Source of the DNA: Pelomyxa schiedti
Lineage: Eukaryota > Protista > Evosea
Assembly (NCBI GenBank): GCA_020536535.1
Contig: JAHLWZ010000693.1
Span: forward strand, 1 to 64,000
Direction: 5' to 3'
DNA: 64,000 bases
Shown here: positions 10,639 to 26,537 of the stretch, in pieces
How positions within the stretch are numbered: the first letter of the stretch is position 1
Layout: every line of letters starts with the position of its first letter
The notes under the pieces: model-generated
What the model was told of the DNA's origin: nothing
The model's input: the letters and a program-made list of their open reading frames with translations, nothing else
Databases searched by the model: none
Translations under genes and position numbers: made by a program

Positions 10639-12356
10639 ATGGAAGAAGGTGGTGCCGGTACTGCGGTCCGAAGGGTGTCGCACGAGAGATCTAGCAGAGA
10701 CAGGCAGATCCCGCAGAGGGAAGAAGTTATGGATAACGACAGGGAGAGGGATTCAGCTGTGGCGTCTGTATCTGTCGTCGCAGAGCGAGCGGATCGAGAG
10801 CGCGACCAGCGAGAGAGAGACCAGCGGGAGCGAGACGCTGAGAGGGAGCGCGAGCGTGAAAGAGAGCGCGAGCGCGACAGGGAAAGGCAACGCGAAAGCG
10901 ACAGGGAAAGAGACCGCGAGCGGGAAAGGGAGAGGGAGAGGGAAAGAGACAAGGAAAGAGAGCGCGACAGAGAACTTATGAGGAGAGACAGGAGCCGCGA
11001 GAGGAGCAGGGAGAGGGAAAGAAGTAGGGAGAGGAGCAGAAGCAGGGAAAGGAGCAGAGAGAGGAGCAGAGATAGGGATAAGTACAGGTACAGAGATAGG
11101 AGCAGGAGCAGGAGTAGGAGCAGGGATCGTGACAGGTATGACTTCAACCACATGATGAACTTGGAGATGTCACTTGATGATCTTGGGAGGAGAGGAGCAC
11201 GCCCTAGTACGAACTATATTTCAGTATTTCGTAAGAACTGACCTCAATTTTAGGGACCTGTTTCAATTGTGGACAATTTGGGCATATTGCCGCCATGTGT
11301 AGGGCTCCTCCACCACCTTTCCCCTTTGGTCGTGGGCCTCGTGGACCATTCCCTTATGGCTCTCCGTTTTCTGCTGGTTGCTTCCAGTGTGGTCAAATGG
11401 GCCATATTGCGAGAGAATGCATGCTACGAAATTCACTTCCTCCTCATCGAATGTTTGGGGGTATGCCTCCCCCTCCAATGCCGCTTGGTCCCATAATGCC
11501 TGGTGCTGGGGGGAAATGTTTTGCCTGCGGGAGATCAGGGCACCTTGCTCGCGAGTGCCCCACCAATGATGCTGTAGGACTGAGCGCTGAAGACTCCTTG
11601 AATCGTTGTTTCGTTTGCAACAAGACTGGACACTATGCGAGGAATTGCCCAGAAAACGTTTCACAGAGTAGTGGTTGCTTCGTCTGCTCTGAGGTTACCT
11701 TACTTCACCAATCTTCTATTTTTCATTCCTTTAAGGTTGGACATATGGCAAGGGACTGTCCCAAGAGAGGCTCACACAGCCATTCAAAGCGGAGCAGTAG
11801 TCAAACTTCCACCAATCCTGATGGGTCTATGAGTATCAGTGCAGAACCCAATGTACTTGAGCCGGGGGCAATTCCCAGTACTGGGGAAAGGGACATTGCG
11901 GAGCCTGGTGCAATAGAAAGGTCAAGGTCACCTCCCAGGAAGTCACCTCCCCATTCACCCCCAAGGTCACGTCCGCATTCTCGTTCACATTCCCGTTCGA
12001 GATCCCCTACCCAACATTACCATTCCCCACCGCGAGCCCATTCCCCGCGCTCTCATTCCCCACATTTCAAGCAATCTCCTTCTCGACGATCTCATTCTCC
12101 TGTCCACGATCCTCAAAGGCGACGCTCACATTCTCCACAACGATCTCCTTCTCCTTCGCGGGGTTTCAATTCTGGGGTATGTTTCTCCTGTGGCCACCCA
12201 GGACACGTTGCGCGTGAGTGCCCTACGTACCGAGAGAACTCTGGTGTTCATTCTTGCTTTTCATGTGGGAAGTTAGGACATATGGCTAGAATGTGCCCAA
12301 ATTCCAGGTTTTTGCTGTCCTTCATTCAGTATTTTTTCTAATTGAGAAACAGGTAG
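10639..12356 (+). CDS. RE/RD/RS-rich protein with seven CCHC zinc knuckles
   Basis: Exon 1 has RE/RD/RS dipeptide repeats. Then CFNCGQFGH, CFQCGQMGH, CFACGRSGH, CFVCNKTGH, CFVCSE|VGH, CFSCGHPGH and CFSCGKLGH knuckles, with an RS/SP block between knuckles 5 and 6. Confidence 0.88.
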
Positions 12357-15168: not shown

Positions 15169-18100
15169 TTATGGTTTTTGTTGGGGTAGATTTTTAAATA
15201 CAGAGATCATAACGTGGTGAAGCTGTGGAGCATCCATTATTGTGAAGTGATTTCCAGGTGCTCGTGAGCAGGTTACCTCGCCGCCTAGCATGGAGAGCCA
15301 CAGCCCCATTGTGGGAATTCCGGTGCGTTGCCTTTGATTGTGTTAGTTGAAAGTGATTGTTGTAATGAAAGTGCCAGTTTGGGTTGATTTATGTTTGTTA
15401 AGAAAGGCAGAGGAAGGCTTACTCCGGAATGGCACCAGGTGTGGTTATCTGGAGTGGATCAGCTTCAGAAGCTAGAACCACAATTGTATGACCGCGGAAA
15501 AATGTGGAATGGTCAAAGGATGCTGTTAGCTTGTTTTCCACTATGGCACAGTTGACCTGGATTTGAACGTGTGACCTCCCTGGTGATGAAGAGAGAATGA
15601 CGGGCTGCATACTTCTTTGGATACATAAGTCATATCAACAGAGTCTAGTCCACACAACCTAAAGAAGTGTTTCCAACAGTTTGGGTTTTGGCAGGCATCG
15701 GTAGGTTCAGGTTCTTCTAAAGCAGTCTTTGTGATACTGTCATTAAGAAGGTGCACCAATTCGTGGTACGGCTTCCTACACATCACCTATGGAAAATAAG
15801 GAATTTACAAATGTGACCACATACAAATGCATAGAAAATCAAGAACATTTCTGTAACGTCTCTATCACTAGAGAAAATGGGCATGCCGGGATTAGGGGGT
15901 TTTATGGGATCAAGGAGTATAAGTTCAACCCGATACCCCTTTTCATACAGTTCTGAGGCCGCCATTATAGCAACTAAGCAGGAATACGATAGACCTAGAA
16001 TATAAACAGGACTGGGTGGCTCATGTTGAGAAATTGAAAGGATGATAGTGCAGTAAATCGAGACAAGCTCAGGTAAGGAGTGAATCTCATTCCCAAGTAG
16101 CATGTCTTCCATGCAAGGGTGATGTAATGCGATGAGAGGTTGGTTATCTGGAATGTGTGGAAGCATTTCGCGATACCATTTCCCATGTGTAGCCCAAGGT
16201 GCTATTACAAACAAAGGAGGGATGTTGGAGGCTGTACTGCCTTGCCGAATGACTACCACACTCTTGGAGTGAATTGGTGAGAGTAGGGGGGAAGAAGGTT
16301 TGATAGAGGCGTCAAAGGTCTTGATGGGCATACTAACGTCGCCAGAGGAAACGCCAGACGCTACAGCATCAATCAATTCTGATACTGAGAGTTCTAGTAT
16401 AGTTGATGGAGTTATTTGGATATTTTTGTTGCACGTTGATAGAATGTTATGTAGCTGAATACTCACAAGTGAGTCGAATAAGCCAATCTTCGCGAGTGGT
16501 GCGTTAGTATCAATTGCAGACAATTCCACGCCGATTGTACTTTTCAATGCTGCCTGGACAATCTGACCCGCGTGCAGATATCGTACATTGCTGTCTAGGG
16601 TGGGGAGAGGCTTATAAACTGTAGACGCAACAACTTTGAAGGAGGTTTTTGTTACATCTCCCGAAGTAGGACTTGGGTTAACAACTGTAACTACCCCTGG
16701 TAAGGAGTGTGCGTTCTGCAAAAGATGTGATAGAGCACGTAAACAACTGTGTACTGGAAAAATGGCAGATAAAGAGTTAGTCAAAGTATTCCGTGAAAGC
16801 CCCATTCCATGCCACTGAGGCCACTGCACAACCATAACATGATGACGAAAGTCGCTCAGGCACACTCCAGTTACAAAAGCTTCCATAGCGGCGTTCGCTG
16901 CAGCATAGCAAGCCTGACCAGGGGCCCCATACAAAGCAGACAGGGAAGAGAAGATGCTGATCACGCAAGGATTCGTCGCTGACACGGTACTCCGCAGAGC
17001 ACCAAGAAGAGACACTGCACCACCAAGCTTGGGTCTCAGGGTGTGCTCAATAAGTTGCTGTGAAATGAACTCGAATTTTGCATTCCCTGCAACAGCTGCA
17101 CAGTGAAAAAGAGTATTCAAAGAGGAACTTGCACTAAAGACTTGTTGAAGAGCCTCCACAGTCGATTTGCTTTCACTGATGTCAACTTGTAATTGATTGG
17201 GGGAGGAGAGTTTCGTCCTACTGAAGCCCCAAACTGTGTTGGCTGAATTGGATTTGCACCACGAGGTAATTAGTTGTGGAATTGCACCGGAACTGCCAGT
17301 AATCAAAACATCTTTATTTTTAAGATCATGAGGTGAACGGCAAGTTATTGACAGCGGTTCGATTTGTGGAATATAACGCTGATGCTGTCGGAAGGAAATT
17401 ATGGAATAACTCCCTCCACCAAGAGAAGAGAGTCTCTTCATCGATTTAAGTGCTTCGTGGGCCATAGTGTTTACTACATCATTGTCAATGGATGACGGGC
17501 ATGCTAAATCTACTACTGATACAACTAGGTTAGGATCTTCTAGGCATAAAGACTTCACAATGGCAACAAGAGCAGCATACAGGGGGGATGGAGGGTAATT
17601 TCCAGTCACAGGAATATAAAAGGCGCCAAAGGTGACCAATTGTACACAGGATTTTAGACCAACCCTGGTAGTGCGTTGGCAAAAGGTTTGAAGAACGGAA
17701 ACGGTCTCGTAAAGTTTACTAGAGAGGACTGTGCAATCAGAGCTTTGGGCATCAGTTTCTTCAAAATTGGCAATTACTACGAGCAGAGGAACCGATGAGC
17801 GGAGGTTTTTTAGTGTGTGGCTTGTGCTCGAGGTTATATAAGATGCAGAGCTACTCAAACAGCTTGTCCATCCCCCAAGCGATTTCAAATGTATCGAGTA
17901 GGTATTTGCCCATTGTAGTCCAGGATTTTGGTGCCTCATTGTAAGGACAACAGCAGTAATTCCACGACTGGTGTGCGAGAGCGGAATCTCCCTTTTCTTC
18001 GACTGCTTCCAGCAACACTGATATAAAAAACTTCTAACATCTTGAGGTGAAGCTGTAGTCAGGTCACTCATAATTACTTCTGGGCTGACTAAATGCATTT

Positions 18101-21100
18101 TAAGGCCTTTAACAACTAAATCCATTGTTCCCTCAGAAAATGGAAGTAGTGATGCGCGCATGTCACTCTTCGGTTCACATCTCTTAGCAAATATCTTGCC
18201 TACTAAGGTGTTACTGTCTGACCCATATGGAGATTTGAGTTTCACAATAACATCAAGTGTAAGAGGTCCGTCCAGTAGCGAGCTTACCTCAAAATATGAT
18301 ATGTGAAATGGAACCCACCACTTCTTTGCACTGCTAGTAGGTAAGAGGAGAAGAGCGCCAAATGCACACCCCTGTAAGCAGGCATCCAATGTCCTAGTCA
18401 CCTGTTCCACTTGAATGTGATTTGTGTCCTCTTCCATTTTAACGCGCGTCATAATGAGGATGTTCCACTTCGTTTTTCGTAGGATTAGAACTTGCTGTAC
18501 CAGTTGAAAAGCCTTTCCATATTGGAATCCTTGCTTCTCCAAAAGAGAATAAAAGGGATGGGCATCCTCAGGAGTAGTGCTACTAAGCTCAGAATCTTTA
18601 ATTTTTGGAATTTTTACAGGAACCTTGCTTGATATGTCTCCACTACAATACAATGGTGTTAACTCAGCCGTAGATGCACTGCCATGGATTGAGAAAGTAC
18701 ACTTTTTCCCATTTTCCGTAAAATTGACATCAATTGGAGTGCCTGATTCTACAAGCAGTGCTTTGTGTACATGAAAAGATGAAATGCATCGGACAGGTGT
18801 TTCTGATAGAATAGAGGCAATAAAATAGGTGGCTGGGGCAATATTGATCCCAAAGAGTTTATGTTCTGAAATCAGAGGAAGGGAGGCGGGATGAAGCTGA
18901 AATTTGGAAGTTCCAACAGATACTGGGGAAGTGAGATCTTCTCTGTCATATTGATAGGTTGGGAGGGAGAGGATGTTGTGTTTTGTTGGAGGGAACACTA
19001 TATCCATGAGTGTTTTCCAATTTACAGCAACCCCATTTTCCCATAACTTGCCAGCCACTCCAATAACATGCGCGAAGACAGTTGGGAATGTTGGGGTCTT
19101 GACATCAAAAAGGTCTAATTGCTTTGTTCCATTCTGAAAAAGAATGGAGCTGGAAAAAGGAGTCTTGGTACCAGAATTCATTAACTGCTCCCAAGAAGAT
19201 AAAAGTAAGTCTGAAGAAAATTCCTTCCCCTCGAATGTAATATTACGGGGGATCAGTGCACTTTGATTTGGAGGTAGAGATGCAGTACTGTTCGACAATA
19301 AAAAAGCTATCACTATGCTTTGTGGAGAGCACGCATCTCTCTTTATTTCGATTGGGGTTTCATTTAACATTAAAGATTCTTTCAGAAGCCAAAAAATGGT
19401 GCAGACAGTGGCTATGTGCTGTCCAACGTGAGAGGGAAGTAAAGATAATAATTTTCCTATTATTGAATTCTGTGTTGGACTCAGGTTTGCAATTAGCGAG
19501 ACTGGAAATGTTCGTGCACAAGTACATTCGTGAAAATACATTGCTAGAGTTGAGTCGTCTGCAACTGTAGGTTGTACATCTGCTAGGCGATGGAGCGTGT
19601 CAGTCAAATCACCCAGCGAGTTGCAAAGGAATGAATAACGATTCCTGTAATGTGGTCGATGCATGGCAAGAGTATATGCAATATCGTCGAGTGATAAAAA
19701 TTGTGCTTGCGCAGACAACTTCTGTGAGTGATCCCATAGAACTCTACTATAGAGATGCAAAGAAGTTTCCGTCTGCGCAGAGAGCAGAAATAGGCTAGTG
19801 TGGCTGCTAGATGCAACAGACAGATTTGTTAAATTGTTGTGGGGTATCATAGCTGGTTTGTGATGACACTCCACGGCAAGTAGTGCATGTGCATTTGTGC
19901 CACCCAAACCAAAGCTGCTTACACCACACACACGTACTTCATTTTGGTTCCACCTGTTACTTCGAGGGGTAGTATGAAAGCAAGTCTTAGTGAGATTCAG
20001 ATTGGCATCTTCACCCCCACTATTCGGAAGTGAAATGTCTGAAGGAAATAACCCAGAGTCAAGGCAAAGTGCACACCGAATCAATCCAGCAATTCCTGAG
20101 GCTGTGTTTAGATGCCCAACTGCTTTTTTTACTGACGTAAGGAGGCACTGATTTGGTGTAGTTACAGAGTGAAAGACCTTAGACAGAGCCTGAACTTCCA
20201 CTAAAGCAAAAGTACTTTAGAAAAATGCAAGAAAGTATTCAACAACCTTGATCTCCTATGATTGTGCCTGTTGCATGAGCTTCTAGGAGGGAAATCATAC
20301 CCATTGAAAAAGTGGCCCCAAGAAACCGTGTCACCTCATTGGTATTGCAAGAATTGATACAGTCTTCAATTACACGCTGTTGCCCATGGATACTGGGAGT
20401 GGTGAACCCCGCTTTCTCTTTACCATCATTATTGATGTGAATGTTCAGTATTGTAGCATAGACATGATCACCATCGTTTATAGCACTGGTCAGTCTTTTG
20501 ACACACACAGCACCCCCACCATTAGATAGCACTGTTCCTGTTCTATTTTTGTCAAAAGGTCTGCAGAAACCATCAGTCGAGAAGATAAGACCACCATCAT
20601 TGCAGGTTTGTGGCATTCTTACTGAAACGCCTCCAACAACAGCAAGGTCACATTCGCGGGATCTATCACTACTGGTTAAAAAAAAAAATAAAGTTGTGAA
20701 GGTGCACACAGTAAGGAATGTTTGGCCTGATGTAAAGCAACGAGTGAACTGCTGCAAGCTGTGTTAACCATTATTGACGGTCCTTGAAAGCCAAATACAT
20801 AGGAGGATTTCAGAGGAACGAAATCCGGCACACTCCCCAGAAGGGCAACCATCTTCTCAGGAGTATTGGCAGCTGAGGGAGGTACAACGGAGGGAGGAGC
20901 AACACCACAAAATACCCCCACATTTGTCACGTGTGTAGTAGAGGGAAATGGGGCATAACCGGCATGTTCCAAGGCAGAGTAGCATATCTCTAACCACAAG
21001 AGTTGTTGTGGGTCACTTTTTTCTGCCTCCAAACGTGACATGCGGAAAAAAGAGTAGTCAAACCATCCAAGACCCTGAAGGATACCAGAAGACGCGGTCA

Positions 21101-24100
21101 CTGAAGGAGCATCCTTCGAAGGAACTCTCGTAAGACACTCCTCACCCCCACAAATAACGCTACTCCAAAAAGAATCCAGGGAGTTTGCTTGTCCTGGCCC
21201 ACGAAATTCCATCCCTATAATGGCTAGCAAAGAATCATAGGAGACGATATCGTTGCGTTCTGGATGAGGATAATGAATCACACTTCCAGGGTCATTTGAG
21301 GAGATTGCATTCGACATAAAGCATGCAAGTGAAGTTGGGGTGGGGTAGGTGTACAGGTCAATGATCTGTAAATTAGGCCACTTCTGGAACAACAGTTGGT
21401 AGAGCTTAACTAGTGTGAGACTTGAACAACCCAAGTCAAAGAATGGGAGCGCTCTTTTCTCATACAGGTGATGTAGCTTGGTCCCCAAAACTAGTTGCAA
21501 ACTCTCCAAAATTTCTGTGCATAGTGCTGTTGCCATGCCCAAGTCTTCTGAACTGGGTATCTTACTTGGGGGTGCTTTTTCAAGTTCTTTCATGTGTTGC
21601 GACAGTAGCAGAGATCTGTCAAGCTTTCCACTCGGTGTGACTGGAAGATTTTCTTGTATAATTATCTTACTTGGGATCATTGAGGCAGGAATGTGTTGTG
21701 AGAGGTGCTCAACCATACTGCCTGGAGAGAGTTTTCCTGTTTCTCCGGCTTCAATAAATGCAACCAGACTATCCTCACATGTGACTGGGTCCTTATACAA
21801 ACTAACAACACAGGCAGTGACATAGTTATTGTGAAGTATGGCAGTCTCGATTTCGGAGGTCTCCATACGAACACCCCTGATCTTCACCTGAAGGCAGAGT
21901 CAGAAGTGTAGGGTGGCAATTGAAAGACCTGCAAATCTCTTCTCGTCAAGAACTCTAAATTTCCATCGGAAAGTACGCGGCAAATATCTCCAGTTTTGAA
22001 CCAAGTACTTGTGTTTGACTCGTAGAAGCCACCAGGGCCTTGGTATCCAAAATACCCTAAAGCAACTCCAGGACCGCCAATGTGTAACTCACCCTCCAAG
22101 TACGGTGCTCCTCTTTCAGTATCTGGTGGTATGTTGAATTCCATGTTGCGTATTGGCTTTCCAATGGGAACACGTTCATTGTACCAAGGAACAGAAGAAT
22201 TGGGATGATTTTGCTTAACAGCAGCCGCGAGTTGAAGGAGATCTTTGGGGAATACAAACATTGTACAGAACACAGTTGTTTCTGATACCAAGAAAGGGTG
22301 AGCAACAACTTTAAAACCCAAGTCATACCTGTGGGACCATAAGCATTTACAAGGGTGAGTGCTGGAAGAGCAGTTTGAAGGTCACAAAGGTGCTTGAAAA
22401 TGATCGGCTCAACACCTTTGAGAATTCACTATGGTTCAAAGAGAATTGCTTTACCAGTTAATATCCTCTTCATTGATGGTACAACAATCTCTCCTGTTCT
22501 TAGCATATCGACAAGTGAAGGAATAAATGCAGGTGGCACAAAAGCAGACGTAACACCATTATTCTTTAAGAAAGAGAAGTACTCTCTCTTACTTCTACGG
22601 ACTGCATCGGGACAGATAACAAGTGAGGCACATGCTGTTAGAGGAGCAAGAATTTCAAGAACTGAGACATCAAAATGCGATGGAGTCCACATTGATTGTG
22701 TGAACTGTGGAGGGAGAGGAGGTTTGATGTCCTCCATAAAGCATGACAATAAATTTAGAGTACTCCTGTGGGATACACAAACACCCTTTGGCGTACCTGT
22801 TGTTCCTGATGTAAAAATAATATAGGCAGTTATTTGGGGAATGCATTTGGCCACAGGAGAGCATGAGTTGGAGTAGAAAGAGGGCTCATTGCTGGATCGT
22901 ACTTTGTAGTTCCCCGCAATGTGGGAGCTAAAAACGACAATGCTACATTCCACAGTTTCTTTAGAAGGGGATGATTTCTTGCAATTGGGAAGAATTTCGA
23001 AAGCTATCACCAAGTTGCTTCCGCATATGGCTTGGGCTAGTGGGTGCAATGGTTTGCTGCAAAGGATAACACATGGTGACAACTTGTTGACAATTTTCTG
23101 CAACCTTGAAATTGGGCTTTGTGTGTCCAGTGGAATATAAATACGTTCACAGATCCAAGTAATAGCGGCAGCCAAGGCATACTCAATGGAGGGTTGGGAC
23201 AATACAATTACCCGAGATGATGTGTAAGGAAGAAGAGCACTAAATGCACGAGAGGTTCTCATGATGGTCTGGTAGGTACAGAAAAATTCATTGTAACAAA
23301 TAGCGGGATAAGAAGGTGTCTTGCAACAGGACATGGAAAGAAGTTGCCCAATAGTTGAAGAACTGGGTTCACTCAATGTTGATAACTGTGTTGGGTGTAC
23401 TTGTTCAGAGACTATGTGGGGCATTTCAAGTTGGAGGGGAGCATCTGGTTTTAGACACGCTACTGGATTGTTAAGTGGTTGTCTCATTTGTAGAGTGGCA
23501 AACTGTGAAAAACGATTCAACATATTGGAAGCCACTGATGTGCTTATATCCGGGCAATGTTGAAGTTTTGCAAAGTAACCACCACCATTTGGAATAATAA
23601 GTAGACTGAGAGGGAAGGCCACTGATTCATCAGGTATTTCCAGACTCTCACAGGCACCTATGCCAAATAAATGTTTCTCACTCAAGTGCCCACCACACTG
23701 GCAGAAGTGGGGACTCAAGTCTTGGCATGGGTCTGGGAGTGATTGGATTCCAAAATAAACATGTGGGCGAATGAGAGCTTTATTTTTGGATGGAAATAAC
23801 GATTGCGACACCTTGGAAAAAGGGATTCCTCTGAATTTTTTACTATCCATCACTTGTTGTCTTATTTGTAAAATGTACTCAGCAAAATTTGGTAGCCTAT
23901 TGGTAAAATCCAGTATTGAGCGGATAAGAATGGTGTTTGCGTAACAAAAAATAACAGATCTATCCTGCGCACTTCTTAAAGTAGCAGCAGTTCCAATGAC
24001 AATGTCATCCTGACAAGAAATTGAATGTACAAACAGTGTCCATAAAGAAAGTAAAATCGTAAATTGTGAAGCCCTGTTACAAATCAGAGGAAGGTAACAA

Positions 24101-26221
24101 ATAGAGTCCGGACACACTGAAACATGTCCATTGCCTTCATAACTAACTCTTTGAATGTGGTACCCAAGGCACAAGAAACTGAGCTTCCACGAAAGGATGA
24201 ACTGGCAGCAGAACCACGCACAAACGGCAAATTTAATGTCATAATACTGCCATTAAGAAGTGACTTCCAATGACCGAGTGGTTCTACTGCTGGGAGACAA
24301 CGAGTTGAGAGATGAAGATTCCATATGACATATGGTATAGTTGTTTGAGTACCCAGAGTGAAACCCGAGGACTTGCCCTCATATGCCTCCTTAATTCTAT
24401 GGAAAAGGGCGGCAGCACTAAATAAGTCTGTACATAGATGGTGCACTGCAATACCAATTGCTGTATTCAAAACAGAAGTCCTACATGATAGGAAAAACAC
24501 GCAAGCTCTCAGATATTGCCCGTTAGAGGGGCCCAACATTGGTTGATGCAAAAATTGCCCAACCTTTTCTCATGTGAGGAAAATATTGGGCAATTTCTGC
24601 TTTTAACCTTAGTTGCGATGCGTGTCTTCATTTCAGTTGGAGACAGCGCCTCTGTAATGGTTTCATTGATAAATGCACATTCAAAAGACGTTGACATTTG
24701 CTTATGCATCTCTCGCACAGAGACTGGACAGCAATACAGTGAGCCGTCCCCTTTATTTACATAGTACTTTGTTCTGAGGATTTCGTTCTCTTCCACTGCA
24801 TCCTGACAGGCACAGTAAAACCTTTTGGTGTCCAAACACCCGCCATCAAAGCACCCAGTAAACATGTTATGAAGCAATGAGTGATGTTGTGGTGGAATAT
24901 ATTGCTGAAGTGACCAAAATTCTTCTTGAATGGAAGAAGCAATATAAGGACAGTGGCTCCTATGCACACAAGAATACATATAAACAAGGGACACAAGTAA
25001 ACGACTGTAGAGAGCCAGCACGGTATATCCTCCTGGTTCAGGAAGAAACCAGTAGTGACTGGCTAGAAGTTGATGAAAATCCCGGGTTTGTTTTTGACTG
25101 AGATGTTGATTGATGGATAAGTTTTCTGCCAAACCACAAGTCAGGCATGAAAATTGGTGCCAAGTTGGGATATGTTGCAGAAGAGAGTTCAAAGCTAAGG
25201 GTTCTGGAATAGTAAGAAAAGGTGGCATATTCACCACTTGTGGTAATTTCCGTGCTACGAACGCTCGCACCCAGTTTTCTACCTTATCTTGGAAAATGGA
25301 TGAGACTTCCACACTTGTCGCTGCCTCCACCATTTCCGGACACTGCAAATTGCATTGATACGAGGGAGCAACCCATAGGCCAAGCCAGTCCACTGAAATT
25401 CCGTGATTTGACAGCACACACAGTGCGGAAAGGAACAAAAGGGGTGTGCTGCAGTCACACGTGCACAGTCTGTCTCTTGGTCTACATATGAAGTCAATAT
25501 CCTCCCATGAATGAGCAAGAATCACAGCAGAATTCCCATAATCTCCCTTTGCGCCGGGATCAGTGTATCCCTCGTTCTCTTGCTGTAGAGGAGAAACGGC
25601 AGGGGTCACAAATCCTAGAATATCGCACTGGACTCCAATACTACCCATAAGTGACTGTAAGCGGGTGGCGTGGTCCAAATCCGGGTTTGAATCTGTCTGT
25701 TGCGGCAGTAGTTGATCGCCGGTGGGGTGCAAGTACGAGTCGCCAAACCTTTCAGCGAACGCATTTGATCTGCCGGACCACCCCGCTTCAGTGTCCCCGC
25801 CACTTCCAAGTACCAAACAAAAAACGACGCCGGCAGATCGTCCTCCATCTCGATCCTCCGTGGAATCTCGTTCAGCTTGTCTTCCTGGTTGCCGGACTCC
25901 TTCGCGCTGAGGGAATCCCTCAAGGGCCCTGAGCACATCGCCGATGGATCTCACCACGACGGCGCGGCCGCGATCGTCGTACGAGCTCAAACTCGCACCC
26001 TCTTCGGCGCTTCCTGAAGTGTCTGGTCCGCTTACGCTTTTGTTGTCGGTGTTGGTGGCGCTGTCGGACGGACGCACGCAAGCTCGCTGGGAGAGGAGCT
26101 GGGAGGTCACGCATATGGAGTCGAGGAGATCTTCCCCTGGTTTCCACAACGACGACCACGCGGCAACGTCGGTCGTACAGCCGCTGGGCACCACGAGTAC
26201 ATTGCCCTTGTCGTTCTCCAT
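15169..26221 (-). CDS. Hybrid NRPS-PKS megasynthase: (PKS remnant)-C-A-T-KS-(AT remnant)-DH-KR-ACP-TE
   Basis: C: HHLCTDL, EILRTKY. A: YIIFTSGTTGTPKG, FDVS, NAYGPTE, GELHIGG, FKTGD, KIRGVRME, PVTPSGKLDR. T: FFDLGCSSL. KS: DPQQ, NTACSSS, EAHATGT, KKAVGH. DH: HKLFGINIAP, LDACLQ. KR: ITGSSGAI, YAAAN. ACP: GLFDSL. TE: GLSYS, PGNHF. The ORFs are joined by short GT-AG introns. Confidence 0.93.
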
Positions 26222-26537
26222 AAGCTTTCCGTCAAAACGAAAGAAAAAAGCACTCCTTCTGTGCTTAAAACACGTGTTTTAAGCACATTTTTTCCTATCC
26301 TTCTGCGAACATGGATGTCCCTGTTGCACGACTAGATGGAGTGAGTCCGGCAGAGACAACAGGGCAATCCTCGATCTGTGAGTGCACGCCCACGGAGGAT
26401 TGGAAAGGGCTGGCCTCAGGAATGGTCCTCAGCACGATCTCCTTCGGACTTCGGTAAAAATGGCATTCCCTGCTCGAATTTTGCTAAGTCGTGATGGCCA
26501 AAACCAAAAAAAAAACTAAGTCACAAAGGCAAGTATC

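What the first reader, a model, noticed from the sequence alone, without database searches (positions are those of the whole stretch)
15169..26221. Intron-containing hybrid NRPS-PKS megasynthase in a protist genome
Seen: one ~11-kb gene with C-A-T-KS-DH-KR-ACP-TE order. Catalytic residues look retained: C HHxxxD, carrier serines, KS Cys/His/His, DH His and Asp, KR YxxxN, TE Ser and His. It sits between PDI and TOP1 and has spliceosomal introns, so it is not bacterial contamination. Known: fungal hybrids are mostly PKS-then-NRPS, whereas the NRPS-then-PKS(DH,KR)-TE order is that of the terminal module of bacterial syrbactin synthetases (SylD/GlbC). Inference: it makes an N-acylated amino acid extended by one ketide, reduced and dehydrated to an alpha,beta-unsaturated gamma-amino acid (a potential Michael acceptor). 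This would be an undescribed secondary-metabolite system in a probable anaerobic amoeba.
Basis: partly seen in the sequence, partly recalled or inferred. Interest (0 to 1): 0.9.

Follow-up and report, generated by a model that had tools for sequence, protein, structure and literature searches.

The report
Amoeba peptide-polyketide enzyme lacking acyltransferase
The oxygen-avoiding amoeba Pelomyxa schiedti has one intact, spliced and partly transcript-confirmed gene for a bacterial-type assembly-line enzyme that probably turns a hydrophobic amino acid into a reactive, unsaturated gamma-amino acid, but it has lost the part that loads its two-carbon unit and must borrow one from another protein.

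Summary
Real. An 11-exon gene (minus strand, 26221-15169) of Pelomyxa schiedti encodes 3519 aa without internal stops: dead AT-like remnant, C-A-T-KS, AT remnant, DH-KR-ACP-TE. RNA contigs confirm 4 of 10 GT-AG introns, including the one at which NCBI splits the gene (only the C-terminal 1738 aa were found, KAH3759334.1). Flanks are PDI and TOP1; an intron-containing Sfp-type PPTase exists. Catalytic residues are retained although domains are only 22-43% identical to their best relatives. Correction: the PKS module has no acyltransferase, and no free-standing FabD was found. It is not a syrbactin synthetase: a GlbC homologue has an intact AT, two NRPS modules and partner genes. It works more like barnesin BrnE/BrnF (AT-less KS-DH-KR-ACP-TE) fused in one chain. 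Likely product: an acylated vinylogous Phe/Leu/Ile/Val (about 50%); acyl donor and trans-AT are unknown. No close relative was found in or outside the genome. The scan noted other megasynthases in this genome and had noted the missing AT and N-terminal remnant on this window; I saw no note of this architecture on other DNA. New variant of a known kind.

The parts
15169..26221 (-). Whole gene, 11 exons, 3519 aa: [dead AT-like remnant]-C-A-T-KS-[AT remnant]-DH-KR-ACP-TE
   Evidence: RNA
25352..26221 (-). N-terminal KS-less remnant of a PKS module (aa 1-290): KS-AT linker, start of AT with GHS replaced by GFV, post-AT linker, in order
   Evidence: collinear block score 17.3 vs shuffles -24.3+-7.1, 0 of 500, natural windows at most -9.8; local HMM 4 of 300; other HMM/hhalign tests not significant; Atlas lead 0.76 to KS-AT proteins
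24947..25351 (-). Unassigned helical stretch (aa 290-425); a decayed carrier by eye only
   Evidence: carrier tests not significant; no homologue among 1.84 billion proteins
23496..24946 (-). Condensation domain, HHLCTD at 24443-24426; split by introns 24564-24607 and 24074-24117
21600..23346 (-). Adenylation domain, core motifs A3-A10 present, code DVLFLGAVFK; introns 22416-22454, 22282-22328, 21888-21928
21297..21539 (-). Peptidyl carrier (T), Ser1529 in LGCSSL; same exon as the KS N-half
19878..21230 (-). Ketosynthase, Cys1751/His1895/His1934, hybrid (post-NRPS) type; introns 20663-20709 (RNA-confirmed) and 20201-20246
18924..19877 (-). KS-AT linker, truncated AT remnant without GHSxG, post-AT linker
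   Evidence: about 170 aa between linkers versus about 320 in cis-AT modules; KS end to LPTY 316 vs 431-516; no PF00698 or FabD hit on this contig
18054..18896 (-). Dehydratase, His2351 and Asp2510
16809..17846 (-). Ketoreductase; Lys/Ser/Tyr/Asn kept, NADPH motif reads TGSSGAIP (last Gly is Pro); neither LDD nor Trp fingerprint
16347..16562 (-). Acyl carrier, Ser3148 in GLFDSL
15172..16217 (-). Thioesterase, Ser3309/Asp3335/His3494; three RNA-confirmed introns (15787-15824, 15557-15612, 15332-15422)

Best explanation
An old, bacterial-type, now spliced P. schiedti gene for a working AT-less NRPS-PKS module pair. An Sfp-type PPTase primes both carriers (gene shown, action inferred). The A domain activates a hydrophobic L-amino acid (Phe, Leu, Ile or Val; inferred) and loads T. 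The C domain adds an acyl or polyketide chain from a donor outside this protein (inferred; donor unknown). An acyltransferase acting in trans, most plausibly an AT domain of another Pelomyxa megasynthase, loads malonyl on the ACP (absence of own AT shown; partner inferred). KS extends by two carbons, KR and DH give the 2,3-unsaturated gamma-amino acyl chain, TE releases it. Product: an N-acyl vinylogous amino acid of the barnesin type, a possible protease-directed Michael acceptor used against prey bacteria, competitors or symbionts (role is speculation). The KS-less N-terminal remnant suggests the gene is the back part of a once longer PKS-NRPS-PKS line and may serve as a docking piece.
For: Intact 3519-aa frame across 10 introns; transcribed and spliced in KS and TE regions, RNA also over KR/ACP; T and KS N-half lie in one exon; all catalytic residues kept at only 22-43% identity to the best relatives, which argues for purifying selection; KS has hybrid-type motifs and falls among bacterial post-NRPS KSs; A code DVLFLGAVFK, best hit (35%) the C-A-T-TE A domains of detoxin-like clusters, which share the unusual TGVE motif and for which Phe is proposed in miramides (PMC9503745); AT-less KS-DH-KR-ACP-TE makes vinylogous Arg in barnesin with a borrowed AT (PMC13096860); detoxin-type PipC also borrows an AT (PMC12828459); PPTase and several intact ATs in the genome.
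Against: No free-standing FabD-like AT found; all FabD-model hits lie in or beside megasynthase loci. Eukaryotic ACC central domain not found (control uninformative); carboxyl-transferase hits exist but were not assigned. KR NADPH motif has Pro for the last Gly. C domain is extremely diverged (branch 2.3) and has no shown donor. No RNA evidence for the 5' NRPS half. No metabolite data.
Confidence: 0.5

Rival explanations
1. The enzyme works but stops short of the vinylogous product: KR or DH is weak, so it releases a statine-like beta-hydroxy-gamma-amino acid, or a beta-keto product that cyclises (tetramate/pyrrolinone).
For: KR NADPH motif TGSSGAIP and no A/B fingerprint; DH-skipped products are known even for the glidobactin synthetase (PMC8248439); detoxin-type modules, which share the A-domain type and AT loss, have no DH.
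Against: DH His and Asp kept and aligned over about 200 aa; KR Lys/Ser/Tyr/Asn kept.
Confidence: 0.2
2. It is one subunit of a multi-gene line: another Pelomyxa megasynthase docks on the N-terminal remnant and hands over a polyketide or peptide chain, so the product is larger than a simple acyl amino acid.
For: C domain resembles internal C domains; N-terminal remnant of a PKS module; many KS, AT and C loci in the genome.
Against: No functional carrier shown before C; no partner gene nearby; paralogues are not close kin. Compatible with the best explanation in its downstream chemistry.
Confidence: 0.15
3. The PKS half does not elongate: without an AT the KS only passes on or cyclises the aminoacyl chain, as TAS1's KS does.
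For: No AT in cis, none free-standing; TAS1 precedent (PMC4640141).
Against: KS keeps Cys-His-His, including the His needed for decarboxylation; ACP Ser, KR, DH and TE are all retained, which TAS1 lacks.
Confidence: 0.06
4. A transcribed but no longer functional relic.
For: Very long branches in C, A and KS trees; decayed N-terminal module; two dead ATs; low RNA depth.
Against: 10.5 kb with no stop or frameshift; every catalytic residue kept while the rest diverged.
Confidence: 0.08
5. Bacterial contamination or assembly chimera.
For: Single-cell amplified DNA; host has endosymbionts; RNA and DNA runs come from one study.
Against: Four spliced GT-AG introns in RNA; PDI and TOP1 flanks 64 and 316 nt away; two runs hold 100% and 96% of the sampled words.
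Confidence: 0.01

Closest known systems
Barnesin synthetase BrnE/BrnF (Sulfurospirillum barnesii; PMC13096860)
   Same: NRPS followed by an AT-less KS-DH-KR-ACP-TE module; vinylogous amino acid; anaerobic producer
   Different: Two proteins, two NRPS modules with a starter C, Arg/Tyr, FabD as trans-AT. Window: one fused chain, one NRPS module, hydrophobic code, no FabD found, introns, N-terminal remnant. Sequence kinship not tested (BrnF not retrievable).
Syrbactin synthetase GlbC/Plu1880 (SylD); homologue L098 from Photorhabdus
   Same...C-A-T-KS...DH-KR-T-TE order; collinear alignment at 26% over 1613 aa
   Different: GlbC homologue has an intact AT, two NRPS modules, and 2OG-dioxygenase, MFS and C-A-T partner genes; the window has none of these, and no lysine module for a macrolactam.
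Detoxin/rimosamide-like hybrids (DetG/RmoI/PipC with DetF/RmoH/MirG)
   Same: AT-less hybrid module with AT docking remnant and borrowed AT (PMC12828459); best A-domain hit and shared TGVE motif
   Different: No DH, A-T-C-A-T start, separate C-A-T-TE partner and tailoring genes.
Fungal TAS1 (C-A-PCP-KS; PMC4640141) and bdelloid rotifer NRPS/PKS hybrids (PMC11258130)
   Same: Eukaryotic NRPS-first hybrids; bacterial-type megasynthases in eukaryote genomes
   Different: TAS1's KS only cyclises and has no DH, KR, ACP or TE. Rotifer genes were not compared by sequence.
KAH3759334.1, 'hybrid NRPS/type I PKS [Pelomyxa schiedti]'
   Same: Is the C-terminal 1738 aa of this gene
   Different: Starts inside the KS after an intron that RNA bridges; the full-length protein was not found in the database.

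Membership tests
Syrbactin synthetase (GlbC/Plu1880/SylD) | Terminal order C-A-T-KS-DH-KR-T-TE | tested here: met
Syrbactin synthetase (GlbC/Plu1880/SylD) | Intact cis acyltransferase | tested here: not met
   GlbC homologue AT 175 bits; window remnant only
Syrbactin synthetase (GlbC/Plu1880/SylD) | Two NRPS modules, the first for (hydroxy)lysine, allowing macrolactam closure | tested here: not met
   one module, code DVLFLGAVFK vs DLGDVGSIDK and DVGWITGIVK in L098
Syrbactin synthetase (GlbC/Plu1880/SylD) | Clustered starter NRPS and lysine-modifying enzyme | tested here: not met
   neighbours are PDI and TOP1
Syrbactin synthetase (GlbC/Plu1880/SylD) | KS groups with the GlbC KS | tested here: inconclusive
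   not grouped in ML trees; forced grouping not rejected, p-AU 0.06
Syrbactin synthetase (GlbC/Plu1880/SylD) | Product inhibits the proteasome | not testable with these tools
   needs the metabolite
Barnesin-type BrnE/BrnF | AT-less KS-DH-KR-ACP-TE after an NRPS module | tested here: met
Barnesin-type BrnE/BrnF | Starter C domain and two NRPS modules | tested here: not met
   one module; best C hits are internal C domains, GlbF-type starter C scores 12 bits vs 49; a detoxin-type first C also scores 46, so subtype is not firm
Barnesin-type BrnE/BrnF | Free-standing FabD as trans-AT | tested here: inconclusive
   none found, but an intron-rich diverged gene could be missed
Barnesin-type BrnE/BrnF | Sequence kinship to BrnF | not tested
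   BrnF sequence not obtainable with the remaining tools
Detoxin/rimosamide-like (DRL) | AT-less hybrid module with AT remnant | tested here: met
Detoxin/rimosamide-like (DRL) | A-T-C-A(Pro)-T-KS-KR-T-TE without DH, plus C-A-T-TE partner and GSCFA/dioxygenase genes | tested here: not met
   window has DH, one A domain, no such neighbours
TAS1-type fungal NRPS-PKS | C-A-PCP-KS only, KS terminal | tested here: not met
   DH-KR-ACP-TE follow
Canonical trans-AT PKS | KS in the trans-AT KS clade | tested here: inconclusive
   ML tree puts it among hybrid KSs; forced grouping with two trans-AT KSs not rejected, p-AU 0.105

The most novel reading that the evidence does not exclude
A eukaryotic trans-AT NRPS-PKS: a one-chain vinylogous amino acid synthetase in an amoeba with no FabD, whose ACP is loaded by the AT of a different megasynthase and whose KS-less N-terminal remnant docks a partner, so that unlinked Pelomyxa megasynthase genes form a shared network making a protease-directed warhead.
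Probability: 0.25. Interest if true: 0.82.

Novelty: new variant of a known kind. Interest (0 to 1): 0.58.

Why it matters
No paper in the library links Pelomyxa to polyketides, and vinylogous amino acid products are rare and known from bacteria and sponges (PMC13096860). A spliced, AT-less, one-chain version in an anaerobic amoeba would extend this chemistry to Archamoebae and raises a testable question: which acyltransferase feeds it when no FabD is apparent. The corrected full-length model (NCBI has half) makes expression possible. The enzyme logic itself is known, so this is a new variant, not a new class.

Tried and rejected
N-terminal 420 aa: no homologue in 1.84 billion representatives (only a repetitive spurious ORF), no in-genome paralogue, single-sequence AlphaFold failed (pLDDT 33; not searched further), plain HMM and hhalign tests not above shuffles. 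A carrier before C was not supported. I found no evidence that the N-terminus is the starter acyltransferase seen in other Pelomyxa NRPSs: no hit to any paralogue, and the only signal is to PKS KS-AT linker/AT blocks. Pattern scans for relatives found none in genomes or metagenomes. Exact look-ups of exons failed. AU tests rejected none of four groupings of the KS, so no donor lineage is named; its sister differed between FastTree and IQ-TREE. The C-domain join with GlbC C2 is flagged as long-branch attraction. The X2 contig break at 19351 has the shape of a one-base bubble and is not read as a misjoin (inference). The joined, spliced protein was not sent to any search tool: searches were exon by exon by reference or with P0002; the joined model was used only inside scripts for the frame check, motif mapping, local profiles and trees.
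Full report
Source. The assembly has 52,367,397 bases in 5337 contigs, matching the Pelomyxa schiedti genome of PMC8887013 (52.4 Mb, 5337 scaffolds, 98.4% GT-AG introns). The window is the start of a 136,980-nt contig. A database protein identical to the 3' half is KAH3759334.1 of P. schiedti.

Gene model. Open frames on the minus strand hop at short intervals. Every hop has an in-frame GT-AG intron of 38-91 nt that restores a conserved motif. Eleven exons from ATG 26221 to TAA 15169 give 10560 nt, 3519 aa, no internal stop. RNA contigs skip 15332-15422, 15557-15612, 15787-15824 (two runs) and 20663-20709, all GT-AG on the minus strand; further RNA contigs cover 16387-17110. Run X2 shows no joints and reads as DNA. 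Only 5991 letters could be laid, so the five 5' introns are inferred. All runs come from one study. NCBI's 1738-aa protein begins inside the KS just after intron 20663-20709, which RNA bridges; the A subdomain, T and KS N-half share the exon upstream, so the NRPS-PKS fusion does not depend on an unconfirmed junction. PDI ends 64 nt from the stop and TOP1 starts about 316 nt from the ATG, leaving no room for an upstream KS.

Domains. Pfam exon by exon: C, A, KS, KS-AT linker, DH, KR, carrier, TE. Weak domains were checked with local profiles: T 21.7, ACP 21.1, DH 48.9 bits, all far above shuffles; TE aligns with an NRPS TE. Kept residues: C HHLCTD; A motifs A3-A10 with the catalytic Lys; T Ser1529; KS Cys1751, His1895, His1934; DH His2351, Asp2510; KR Lys/Ser/Tyr/Asn; ACP Ser3148; TE Ser3309, Asp3335, His3494. 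One blemish: the KR dinucleotide motif ends in Pro instead of Gly.

The missing AT. A cis-AT profile matches the KS-AT linker and the post-AT linker, but about 170 residues lie between them instead of about 320, with no GHSxG; KS end to LPTY is 316 residues versus 431-516 in AT-bearing relatives. Neither the AT nor the FabD model hits this contig; all FabD-model hits lie in or beside megasynthase loci. Several of these ATs have intact HSxGE sites. Bacterial modules with similarly shortened, dead ATs exist among the KS relatives. The module therefore needs an AT in trans.

The N-terminal 425 aa. No homologue was found and folding failed. Four landmark blocks of the KS-AT linker, AT start, pre-GHS helix and post-AT linker occur in order in aa 82-284; the five-block collinear score is 17.3 against -24.3+-7.1 for shuffles (0 of 500) and at most -9.8 for other windows of the protein. 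I chose the blocks after seeing the motifs, and ordinary HMM tests are marginal (4 of 300; not significant), so I put this at about 75%. The catalytic position reads GFV, so it is dead. A carrier between it and C is not supported. Reading: the gene is the back part of a longer PKS-NRPS-PKS line that lost its first KS.

Relatives. Nothing close: KS 31-45% to bacterial KSs, KR and TE 20-30%, C 22%, A 35%. The genome has more than a dozen KS loci and over 20 C-domain hits, but none is close. The KS has the motifs of post-NRPS hybrid KSs (the motif reading is from my own knowledge) and falls among them on a long branch, apart from all Pelomyxa paralogues, in both trees. The bacterial set was chosen by similarity to the query, and AU tests reject no alternative, so bacterial ancestry is likely but donor and independence from the paralogues are not shown. 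The A domain is nearest to the C-A-T-TE enzymes of detoxin-like clusters and shares their TGVE motif, so that oddity is not a lesion; its code DVLFLGAVFK shares 5 of 9 variable positions with Val/Leu/Ile-type codes and with a Gly-type code (substrate labels from memory). Phe is proposed for the miramide homologue (PMC9503745).

Comparison. Locus L098 (Photorhabdus) has the gene set and domain order described for the glidobactin cluster (PMC8248439; the identification is my inference): its 4127-aa synthetase has two NRPS modules and an intact AT. The window gene fails three defining tests and is not a syrbactin synthetase. Barnesin's BrnF is AT-less KS-DH-KR-ACP-TE, uses FabD and makes a vinylogous amino acid in an anaerobe (PMC13096860); detoxin-type PipC also borrows FabD (PMC12828459). 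These are what the window enzyme works like; membership was not met or not testable. NRPS-first hybrids are already known in fungi (TAS1, PMC4640141) and horizontally acquired hybrids in rotifers (PMC11258130).

Mechanism and verdict. Shown: intact spliced gene, partial transcription, domain order, retained active sites, no own AT, a PPTase with introns at contig C561. Inferred: hydrophobic amino acid, external acyl donor, borrowed AT, one malonyl extension, reduction, dehydration, TE release of an acylated vinylogous amino acid (0.5). Rivals: hydroxy or keto product (0.2), subunit of a larger line (0.15), non-elongating KS (0.06), relic (0.08), artefact (0.01). New variant of a known kind; interest 0.58.

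Method note. The joined protein was not sent to any search tool; searches used exon references or P0002. Earlier scan notes on the missing AT and the N-terminal remnant were read after my own tests of the AT and before the block test.

Noticed in passing
window 26260-26287: Perfect 28-nt palindrome, the only one of 18 nt or more in the window, 39 nt upstream of the megasynthase ATG in the 316-nt divergent spacer shared with TOP1; no second copy found in the genome.
   Followed up: partly
L016 and L017 (G000:C561 21307 and 24953): Intron-containing Sfp/AASDHPPT-type PPTase; a second near-identical partial copy follows an N gap at the contig end, probably an assembly duplicate.
   Followed up: partly
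L009, L010, L014, L002 (C351, C176, C151:13564, C753:22185): A Pelomyxa-specific clade of KS-AT genes with intact KS Cys and AT sites reading (C/A)HSLGE, two of them next to PKS-NRPS genes on the opposite strand; candidate trans-acting AT donors.
   Followed up: partly
G000:C615, C857, C808: Carboxyl-transferase (PF01039) hits; no ACC central domain found. The source of malonyl-CoA for the many PKSs is unresolved.
   Followed up: no
G000 whole genome: More than a dozen KS loci, over 20 C-domain hits and 12 TE-like hits: a large undescribed NRPS/PKS repertoire in an anaerobic amoeba.
   Followed up: partly
window 15474 and 19351: A>G difference in one RNA contig at 15474 and a one-base contig break at 19351 in a DNA run; alleles or errors.
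   Followed up: no
window 11295-12341: Gene with several CCHC zinc knuckles next to PDI.
   Followed up: no
window 25322-26221: The N-terminal 300 codons have GC3 0.56 against 0.38 for the rest of the gene.
   Followed up: no
L083, L088: Detoxin/rimosamide-like clusters in Kitasatospora sp. NPDC097643 and Streptomyces sp. NPDC101225; L098 is a glidobactin-like cluster in Photorhabdus caribbeanensis.
   Followed up: partly
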